A stretch of DNA of 63,447 bases, counting the filler, from Octopus bimaculoides (Eukaryota), in NCBI RefSeq assembly GCF_001194135.2. It is 5 parts of 5 records of this genome, joined end to end, with 100 filler letters (N's around TTAATTAATTAA, not from the genome) between each part and the next. Parts side by side here need not be neighbours in the genome. Positions count along the whole stretch, not along the records: positions 39,224 to 59,443 come from NC_069008.1; 4 more parts are not named here. One strand, written 5' to 3'. A program made the translations under genes and the position numbers. Positions 39,334-39,386 of the stretch are shown piece after piece (position 1 is the stretch's first letter; every line of letters begins with the position of its first letter). The notes beneath the pieces are model-generated. The model did not search any database and was not told the DNA's origin. It saw nothing but the letters and a program-made list of their open reading frames with translations.

Positions 39334-39386
39334 ATTTGCCAAAATATTTTCGTCACTTTGAGACCACGACATGTTCACTGACAAAA
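39334..39386 (-). ncRNA. Type I hammerhead-like ribozyme with G3-C8 core swap
   Basis: TTTGTCA GTGAACA T GTCGT-GGTCTTCAAA-GTGAC GAAA ATATT T TGGCAAA: 7-bp helix I, 5-bp helix II, palindromic AATATT helix III, predicted UUU cleavage triplet. Confidence 0.7.

What the first reader, a model, noticed from the sequence alone, without database searches (positions are those of the whole stretch)
39334..39386. Hammerhead-like ribozyme with a compensatory G3-C8 core and an extra nucleotide after A9
Seen (minus strand): UUUGUCA-GUGAACA-U-GUCGU(10 nt)GUGAC-GAAA-AUAUU-U-UGGCAAA. U4, G5, A6, A9, G12, A13, A14, A15.1 and U16.1 are all intact, and the only core changes are C3>G and G8>C together. Established: C3 and G8 form a Watson-Crick pair in the active fold and compensatory swaps partly rescue activity; an extra base between A9 and G10.1 is tolerated; palindromic helix III implies dimeric folding. 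Standard CUGANGA searches would miss it. The inverted copy also keeps C8. The predicted UUU site is a weak triplet, and activity is inference.
Basis: partly seen in the sequence, partly recalled or inferred. Interest (0 to 1): 0.9.

Follow-up and report, generated by a model that had tools for sequence, protein, structure and literature searches.

The report
Hammerhead-like motif inside a foldback repeat
A short sequence that looks like a minimal hammerhead self-cleaving RNA with a swapped core base pair really is there and is too good a match to be easy chance, but it sits in one arm of a 342-base DNA hairpin, its mirror copy has lost the swap, no database model recognises it, and nothing shows that it cuts.

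Summary
The motif exists on the minus strand at 39386-39334, as described. Two details are off by one: loop 2 is 9 nt, and the predicted cut is 39342|39341.

It is not an easy chance match. 200 Mb of composition-matched random sequence gave 0-2 hits for the G3/C8 descriptor and none with the extra hallmarks.

Its architecture is that of the minimal type-I hammerheads of Penelope-like retroelements (PLEs):
- an extra base between A9 and G10.1
- a G10.1-C11.1 pair
- a 1-bp helix III with a palindromic loop

The C3G/G8C swap is the one core double mutant that retains activity in published mutagenesis.

Against an active ribozyme:
- No Rfam hammerhead model scores it, even on a 67-nt search.
- It is one arm of a 342-nt near-perfect hairpin (-253 kcal/mol) that abolishes the hammerhead fold in any read-through transcript.
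- The sister copy has A3xC8, G10.1.U11.1 and a helix II mismatch.
- Each strand carries only one sense copy, so no tandem dimer can form.
- No further copies or retroelement ORF could be found.
- Other foldback repeats lie next door.

Verdict: partly supported. It is probably a hammerhead-lineage motif, variant or decayed (about 0.6), with activity unproven. Chance remains about 0.37.

The parts
39224..39565 (.). 342-bp foldback (inverted-repeat) element. The left arm is 39224-39387, the spacer 39388-39397 and the right arm 39398-39565. The left end coincides with the edge of the piece.
   Evidence: Outer arms are 82 nt and 99% complementary; inner arms are 78 nt and 87% complementary, with a 10-nt spacer. 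Folded as RNA it gives -253.5 kcal/mol, z = -29. The arm alignment is 90% identical, and all differences lie in the inner 98 columns.
39334..39386 (-). Hammerhead-like motif, left-arm copy. Helix I is 39385-39379 paired with 39341-39335. The core GUGAACA is 39378-39372 (G3 = 39378, C8 = 39373). The extra U is 39371. Helix II is 39370-39366 paired with 39356-39352, with loop 2 at 39365-39357. GAAA is 39351-39348, the AUAU loop 39347-39344, U16.1 39343 and U17 39342. The predicted scissile bond is 39342|39341.
   Evidence: Sequence. Descriptor hit. The MFE of the 53-mer contains helix I and helix II, -10 kcal/mol, z = -0.99. The same helices appear in the MFE of an arm-only transcript.
39399..39451 (+). 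Sister copy in the right arm: UUUUGUCA-AUGAACA-A-GUUGU-GGUCUGAAA-GCACU-GAAA-AUAU-U-U-UGGCAAAU. It has A3xC8, G10.1.U11.1 and one UxC mismatch in helix II. The core starts at 39407.
   Evidence: Arm alignment. Relaxed descriptor hit. Defect count is 2, against 0 for the left copy. The hammerhead helices are absent from the MFE of the arm-only transcript.
39388..39397 (.). 10-nt spacer (TCTGTGCTGC) at the centre of the palindrome. The two motifs start 1-2 nt from it and read outwards on opposite strands.

Best explanation
The locus is a 342-bp foldback repeat. Each arm carries, reading outwards from the centre, a minimal type-I hammerhead-type motif of the kind borne by Penelope-like retroelements and their non-autonomous derivatives.

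The left-arm copy keeps every invariant core base except the C3-G8 pair, which is swapped to G3-C8. It also keeps the bulged base after A9, G10.1-C11.1, and a 1-bp helix III with a palindromic loop. The right-arm copy has decayed (A3xC8, weakened helix II).

I read the motif as belonging to the hammerhead lineage: either a variant core that arose in a retroelement family or a lightly decayed relic. I do not read it as a working ribozyme at this locus.

Inferred steps:
- In a source element, such motifs would cut multimeric transcripts through a dimeric, extended helix III.
- Here the two copies are on opposite strands, so no tandem dimer can form.
- Any transcript crossing the palindrome makes the antisense arm first and zips into a roughly 166-bp duplex. 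That duplex is a likely small-RNA substrate rather than a self-cleaving RNA.

Shown: sequence anatomy, rarity under null models, hairpin energetics, and the differences between the arms. Inferred: retroelement origin, mode of action, inactivity.
For: Rarity:
- The G3/C8 descriptor gave 0-2 hits in 200 Mb of random sequence, and none with the three extra hallmarks.
- 825 kb of real unrelated DNA gave none.
- Only this locus and its sister arm hit in the piece.

Match to PLE minimal hammerheads:
- Three features that Cervera & de la Pena list as emerging independently of their descriptor are present: a nucleotide between 9 and 10.1, G10.1-C11.1, and palindromic 15.2-16.2 with loop 3 (PMC4209133).
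- The same paper reports pairs of min-HHRs close together on opposite strands, and a natural U3-A8 covariation.
- PLE insertions often carry an adjacent inverted 5'-truncated copy, which gives inverted repeats and breaks short-read assemblies (PMC8557442). The piece ends exactly at the repeat boundary.

The swap:
- C3G/G8C is the single tolerated core double mutant (PMC9901934).
- It is partly active in a PLE hammerhead (PMC11167929).

Differences between the arms:
- The 8 differences within the motif fall only on N3, the bulged base, helix II and loop 2.
- They include one compensatory pair (C-G to U-A).
- P(<=2 defects from 8 random substitutions) = 0.036.

Against activity at this locus:
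- Hammerhead pairs have probability <=1e-13 in the full hairpin transcript.
- The hairpin folds at -253 kcal/mol.
Against: - No Rfam hammerhead model reports the locus.
- Helix II (5 bp, two G.U, 9-nt loop) and helix I (7 bp) do not match the PLE pattern of a long helix II and a short helix I.
- No retroelement ORF is visible to the right. The left flank is missing.
- No canonical hammerhead occurs in the 20 kb.
- No second family member could be retrieved.
- Two other foldback repeats without any hammerhead-like motif lie within 1 kb. The inverted arrangement therefore needs no PLE.
- Restricted to the 28-nt block where the differences cluster, the defect test is not significant (p = 0.15).
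- The 53-mer fold is no better than shuffles (z = -0.99).
Confidence: 0.45

Rival explanations
1. Chance look-alike. The 342-bp element is an ordinary AT-rich foldback or MITE-like DNA repeat, one of several in this stretch. Its internal sub-palindromes happen to frame UGA...GAAA boxes. There is no hammerhead ancestry and no RNA function.
For: - Neighbouring foldbacks at 39593-39680/40219-40306 and 39810-40211 show that such repeats are common here.
- There is no Rfam hammerhead hit.
- The fold z-score is -0.99.
- The sister arm lacks the 3-8 pair.
- A still looser descriptor expects 0.35 two-mismatch hits per piece.
- The number of windows the first stage read is unknown.
Against: - The specific form is expected about 1e-3 to 1e-5 times per piece.
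- Three literature-defined hallmarks come on top of the descriptor.
- The one core double change seen is the one known to retain activity.
- All three G.U pairs make the helices specific to the sense strand.
Confidence: 0.37
2. One reading: an active natural hammerhead with a G3-C8 core that cleaves after U17, as an intermolecular or family-level dimer through the AAUAUU helix III.
For: - All other invariant bases are intact.
- The hammerhead helices form in an arm-only transcript.
- G3-C8 retains partial activity in engineered hammerheads, including a PLE one.
- Helix structure is clean: no mismatch in 12 bp.
Against: Several handicaps combine in the motif itself:
- a swapped 3-8 pair, which is only partly active
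- a UUU triplet (weak, from established NUH-rule kinetics)
- a 1-bp helix III whose dimer form is six A-U pairs
- two G.U pairs in a 5-bp helix II
- no loop-loop tertiary contacts evident

Other points against:
- Even canonical PLE min-HHRs cleave poorly in vitro, and not as monomers.
- There is one sense copy per strand.
- The hairpin sequesters the motif.
- The sister copy is broken.
Confidence: 0.15
3. Assembly artefact: the palindrome at the start of the piece is a mis-join, either a fold-back chimera or two haplotypes joined head to head.
For: The left arm starts exactly at the edge of the piece. The piece is a gap-rich draft (2747 N of 20220). The outer 82 nt of the arms are 99% identical.
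Against: The inner arms differ at 17 of 98 aligned columns, including a 4-nt indel. A fold-back read artefact would not produce that. A contig ending at a repeat boundary is the expected behaviour for a real inverted repeat. The motif itself does not depend on the palindrome.
Confidence: 0.05

Closest known systems
Minimal hammerheads (min-HHRs) of metazoan Penelope-like elements (Cervera & de la Pena 2014, PMC4209133)
   Same: Type-I order of elements. An unpaired nucleotide between A9 and G10.1. G10.1-C11.1. No real helix III, but a palindromic 15.x-16.x segment that implies dimers. Occurrence as two motifs close together on opposite strands. Tolerance of a covarying 3-8 pair (U3-A8 in Schistosoma mansoni Cercyon).
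   Different: The core pair here is G3-C8, not C3-G8 or U3-A8. Helix II is 5 bp, not 6-8. Helix I is 7 bp, not 4-5. No pLTR or RT/GIY-YIG ORF is seen, and no family of copies is available.
Type-I hammerheads of amphibian satellite DNA and metazoan non-LTR retrozymes (PMC7229834; Rfam RF00163)
   Same: Helix III is a single base pair capped by a palindromic tetraloop. The monomer is weak and activity comes as a dimer. The setting is repeat-borne in an animal genome.
   Different: Those occur as direct tandem repeats, keep CUGAUGA and have loop 1-loop 2 contacts. Here the copies are inverted, the core is swapped, and Rfam RF00163 does not score it.
Engineered C3G/G8C double mutants (PMC9901934; PAc Poseidon hammerhead, PMC11167929)
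   Same: Exactly the same core change. It shows strong positive epistasis, or partial restoration of cleavage, while each single mutant is dead.
   Different: Those are laboratory constructs in otherwise optimal ribozymes. None of the papers read here reports a natural G3-C8 example.
Foldback or MITE-like inverted-repeat elements; MITE-derived long-hairpin miRNA precursor families (Rfam MIR6140, MIR8562, MIR7533)
   Same: A long, AU-rich, near-perfect hairpin of about 340 nt. Rfam hits of 44-67 bits on both strands reflect that shape.
   Different: All hits are far below the gathering scores (140-245 bits), and those families are from plants. No target-site duplication can be checked, and there is no second copy in the piece.

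Membership tests
Hammerhead ribozyme (Rfam clan CL00010) | Conserved core C3 U4 G5 A6 N7 G8 A9 ... G12 A13 A14 with A15.1-U16.1 | tested here: not met
   9 of 11 invariant bases are present. C3 is G and G8 is C in the left copy; the right copy has A3 and C8.
Hammerhead ribozyme (Rfam clan CL00010) | Watson-Crick pair between positions 3 and 8 | tested here: inconclusive
   The pair is possible as G-C in the left copy and impossible (AxC) in the right copy. The G-C swap is partly active in engineered ribozymes.
Hammerhead ribozyme (Rfam clan CL00010) | Three helices around the core, and an NUH cleavage triplet | tested here: inconclusive
   Helix I (7 bp) and helix II (5 bp) form in the MFE of the 53-mer and of the arm-only transcript. 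Helix III is 1 bp. The triplet is UUU, which is allowed but weak. The fold z-score is -0.99.
Hammerhead ribozyme (Rfam clan CL00010) | Score at or above the gathering threshold of a hammerhead covariance model | tested here: not met
   No hammerhead family is listed at E<=10 for the 20-kb, 181-nt or 67-nt searches.
Hammerhead ribozyme (Rfam clan CL00010) | Site-specific Mg2+-dependent self-cleavage | not testable with these tools
   Needs transcription and cleavage assays.
PLE minimal hammerhead (PMC4209133) | [quoted passage not shown] | tested here: met
   U at 39371 in the left copy and A at 39414 in the right copy.
PLE minimal hammerhead (PMC4209133) | Conserved G10.1-C11.1 pair | tested here: inconclusive
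   G-C in the left copy, G.U in the right copy.
PLE minimal hammerhead (PMC4209133) | Palindromic 15.2-16.2 and loop 3 | tested here: met
   A15.1-AUAU-U16.1 reads AAUAUU, a perfect palindrome, in both copies.
PLE minimal hammerhead (PMC4209133) | Long helix II (6-8 bp) and short helix I (4-5 bp) | tested here: not met
   Helix II is 5 bp with two G.U. Helix I is 7 bp.
PLE minimal hammerhead (PMC4209133) | Genome-wide consensus families with covariation | not testable with these tools
   No animal genome collection is on hand. Metagenome and viral scans gave only chance 19-mers. Protein routes were empty. The two arms show one compensatory pair and two broken pairs.
PLE minimal hammerhead (PMC4209133) | Location in a pLTR next to an RT/GIY-YIG ORF | tested here: inconclusive
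   No long ORF lies to the right of the element. The left flank lies beyond the edge of the piece. No protein-family scan of the frames could be run.
MITE / foldback DNA element | Terminal inverted repeats, target-site duplication, many copies | tested here: inconclusive
   Inverted repeats are present. A target-site duplication cannot be checked because the left flank is absent. There is no other copy in the 20 kb.
Rfam long-hairpin miRNA precursors (MIR6140 and others) | Score at or above the gathering threshold | tested here: not met
   The best hit is 66.7 bits against 140 required, and it matches on both strands.

The most novel reading that the evidence does not exclude
A natural retroelement-borne family of minimal hammerheads that uses a G3-C8 core in place of C3-G8 and still cleaves, as dimers or with host factors. 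It would be the first natural instance of the transversion swap. Every CUGANGA-based search misses it, so hammerhead censuses of animal genomes would be undercounts.
Probability: 0.15. Interest if true: 0.55.

Novelty: new variant of a known kind. Interest (0 to 1): 0.35.

Why it matters
If a family of such motifs exists, it would be natural evidence for the C3-G8 tertiary pair through a transversion swap; only the U3-A8 swap has been seen in nature so far. It would also show that descriptor searches fixed on CUGANGA miss part of the hammerhead repertoire of retroelements.

If it is a lone relic or chance match, the locus is an ordinary foldback repeat in a repeat-rich animal genome. The practical lesson then is that a hammerhead-like parse must be read in its context, here a hairpin that overrides it.

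Tried and rejected
- **Rfam cmscan** at E<=10 on 20 kb, 181 nt and 67 nt gave no hammerhead hit. It returned only sub-threshold long-hairpin miRNA families, microsatellite-driven mir-297/466 hits, and a SNORD70 fragment.
- **Looking for more copies**:
  - Exact or 3-mismatch searches in the window found only the two arms.
  - blastn of the arms against the rest of the piece found nothing.
  - A 19-mer scan of metagenome contigs gave 66 loci and of viral contigs gave 5. All were chance matches of 20-30 nt.
- **Protein route to other assemblies**:
  - A 61-aa open frame across the arm and a 117-aa repeat ORF gave no homologues.
  - Five exact-protein look-ups to recover the missing left flank found nothing.
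I did not paste pseudo-proteins, because the frames look non-coding.
- **Supplements** of the two PLE papers are not held.
- **Papers not held**: the primary papers on C3-G8 exchanges (PMC1986816, PMC2271363, PMC4447102) are not held.
- **Start codon**: an AUG formed by A9-U-G10.1, as in the Anolis PLE where the ORF starts at stem II, opens only a 13-codon frame. I rejected it as an ORF start.
- **Organism**: I recall the SINE-like repeats as resembling cephalopod (octopus) repeats. This is memory only and was not tested.

Full report
**What is in the sequence**

The piece (39224-59443) is repeat- and microsatellite-rich eukaryotic draft sequence with 2747 N. On the minus strand, 39386->39334 reads UUUUGUCA GUGAACA U GUCGU GGUCUCAAA GUGAC GAAA AUAU U U UGGCAAAU.

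Helix I is 7 bp with one G.U. The first box has G at position 3 and C at position 8, and is otherwise canonical. One extra U follows A9. Helix II is 5 bp with two G.U and is closed by G10.1-C11.1. GAAA is present. A15.1-U16.1 encloses AUAU, so that AAUAUU is a palindrome. U17 follows.

Two details are off by one. Loop 2 has 9 nt, not 10. The scissile bond would be 39342|39341, not 39341/39340.

**Is it more than chance?**

I wrote a descriptor with these elements:
- helix I >=5-7 bp
- NUGANNA
- 0-1 inserted base
- helix II >=4 bp with a 3-12-nt loop
- GAAA, then 2-8 nt, then U, then H

In the piece it finds only this locus. With looser helices it also finds the sister arm.

In 200 Mb of first-order Markov sequence with the piece's composition, the G3/C8 form occurred 2, 1 and 0 times for helix I >=5, 6 and 7 bp. 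The canonical core occurred 2, 0 and 0 times. Any <=2 core substitutions occurred 45, 13 and 2 times. No hit combined the inserted base, G10.1-C11.1 and a palindromic helix III.

825 kb of unrelated real DNA gave no hit.

I also made a deliberately generous bound. It multiplies the number of helix-only scaffolds in the real piece, which microsatellites inflate, by the composition probability of the boxes. That gives about 1e-3 for G3/C8 and about 0.1 for any two core substitutions.

The motif is therefore not an easy chance find. How many windows the first stage read is unknown.

**What database models say**

No Rfam hammerhead family (Hammerhead_1, _3, _II, HH9, HH10) is reported at E<=10, whether 20 kb, 181 nt or only 67 nt are searched.

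The region's hits are long-hairpin plant miRNA families on both strands, far below threshold (66.7 against 140 bits). They reflect shape, not membership.

The motif is the inner part of the left arm of a 342-nt hairpin, 39224-39565. The outer arms are 82 nt and 99% complementary. The inner arms are 78 nt and 87% complementary. The spacer is 10 nt. Folded as RNA it gives -253.5 kcal/mol, z = -29.

The left arm begins exactly at the edge of the piece. For a short-read contig that is what a real inverted repeat produces, because the path becomes ambiguous at the repeat boundary. This is inference.

The two motifs start 1-2 nt from the spacer and read outwards on opposite strands. Two consequences follow:
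- Each strand has one sense copy only, so the intramolecular tandem dimer that weak-helix-III hammerheads use cannot form.
- A transcript crossing the palindrome always makes the antisense arm before the sense motif. In the full transcript, every hammerhead pair has probability <=1e-13.

Only a transcript starting at the centre would leave the motif free. In such an arm-only RNA, the left copy does fold into helices I and II, and the right copy does not. The 53-mer alone folds no better than shuffles (z = -0.99).

**The sister copy as a two-sequence comparison**

Aligned, the arms differ at 17 of 168 columns. All differences are in the inner 98 columns, and 8 lie within the 53-nt motif. Those 8 fall on N3, the bulged base, loop 2 and helix II. 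None falls on helix I, U4-A9, GAAA or the helix III palindrome.

Pair by pair:
- C-G becomes U-A, a compensatory change.
- G.U becomes G-C.
- G10.1-C11.1 becomes G.U.
- U-A becomes UxC, which is broken.
- G3-C8 becomes AxC, which is broken.

Eight random substitutions would give 2 or fewer defects with P = 0.036 if spread over the motif. Confined to the 28-nt block where the changes cluster, P = 0.15.

This is weakly suggestive of hammerhead-like constraint. With two sequences and no outgroup it decides nothing.

**What the literature adds**

Cervera & de la Pena (PMC4209133) describe minimal hammerheads in the pLTRs of PLEs and, in thousands of copies, throughout animal genomes. They list features that emerged independently of their descriptor:
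- a nucleotide between 9 and 10.1
- G10.1-C11.1
- palindromic 15.2-16.2 and loop 3
- families rich in covariation

The first three are present here. The same paper also reports:
- pairs of motifs 100-700 bp apart on opposite strands
- a natural U3-A8 covariation, also reported by Perreault et al. (PMC3088659)
- very low in vitro activity, and none for monomers

Craig et al. (PMC8557442) show that PLE insertions often carry an adjacent inverted 5'-truncated copy. This forms inverted repeats that trouble short-read assemblies.

A complete pairwise mutagenesis found C3G+G8C to be the only rescuing double mutant in the U-turn region (PMC9901934). In the Anolis Poseidon PLE hammerhead, the single mutants are dead and the double mutant is partly active (PMC11167929).

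In the papers I could read, no natural G3-C8 hammerhead is reported.

**What weakens the retroelement reading**

- Helix II (5 bp) and helix I (7 bp) do not fit the long-II, short-I pattern of PLE motifs.
- No ORF lies to the right, and the left flank is missing.
- No canonical hammerhead occurs in the 20 kb.
- Two more foldback repeats without any hammerhead-like motif lie within 1 kb: 39593-39680/40219-40306, and 39810-40211. Inverted repeats are therefore common here for reasons that need no PLE.
- I could not retrieve any further copy.

**Weighing**

A neutral relic of a canonical hammerhead would rarely show just the two complementary transversions together with twelve intact helix pairs. 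A chance match is rarer still under my nulls, but it cannot be excluded without knowing how much sequence was screened.

I put about 0.6 on hammerhead ancestry. About 0.15 of that is for a copy or family that actually cleaves. I put about 0.37 on chance within an ordinary foldback repeat. An assembly artefact is a minor possibility that does not affect the motif.

At this locus, the dominant structure of any read-through RNA is the long hairpin, not the ribozyme.

**Verdict**

- If real, it is a new variant of a known kind: a PLE or retrozyme-type minimal hammerhead with a G3-C8 core.
- The decisive test is a family search in the source genome, followed by cleavage assays.

Noticed in passing
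window 40501-40537 (minus strand): A second hammerhead-like string: CUUU-CUGUAGA-A-GAGC GUAG GCUC-GAAA-CA-U-U-AAAG. It has a bulged A after A9 and G10.1-C11.1. A6 is U, helix I is only 4 bp, and the helix III segment is not palindromic. It is single copy in the window. A very loose descriptor expects 0.045 one-mismatch hits per piece.
   Followed up: partly
window 50909-50984 (+): Weak Rfam hit to Hammerhead_HH9: 21.1 bits against a gathering score of 52, E = 0.41. The sequence has no CUGANGA box. Probably noise.
   Followed up: partly
window 39593-39680 with 40219-40306, and 39810-40211: Two further inverted-repeat (foldback or MITE-like) structures lie immediately right of the finding. One has 88-nt arms, 91% complementary, enclosing 538 nt. 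Nested inside it is a roughly 400-bp foldback with arms 88-89% complementary and a perfect 22-nt terminal repeat.
   Followed up: partly
window 40602-40800, 50064-50221, 57308-57471, 47816-47990, 52097-52248, 52449-52530, 42930-42985: A dispersed SINE-like repeat of about 160-200 bp, 72-87% identical between copies, on both strands.
   Followed up: no
window 39682-39810, 42068-42220, 47163-47317, fragments near 57890-58119: A second dispersed repeat that starts with (CAT)n and reads GTCTTAACGTCCGCTTTCCATGCTAGCATGG. From memory it resembles a cephalopod SINE. This was not tested.
   Followed up: no
window 44180-44760, 45000-45500, 48990-49060, 49550-49680, 50220-50390, 51380-51460, 53930-54030: Long compound (TA)n, (TG)n and (CA)n microsatellites. 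They produce the many sub-threshold mir-297, mir-466 and mir-3149 Rfam hits and most of the 'repeat families'. Several abut N gaps.
   Followed up: no
window 54504-54828: Two blocks of imperfect trinucleotide repeats, (GTA/GTG/GCA)n, on the + strand (family D19).
   Followed up: no
window 39224: The edge of the piece coincides exactly with the outer end of the left arm of the palindrome. The true extent of the inverted repeat and its left flank therefore cannot be seen.
   Followed up: partly
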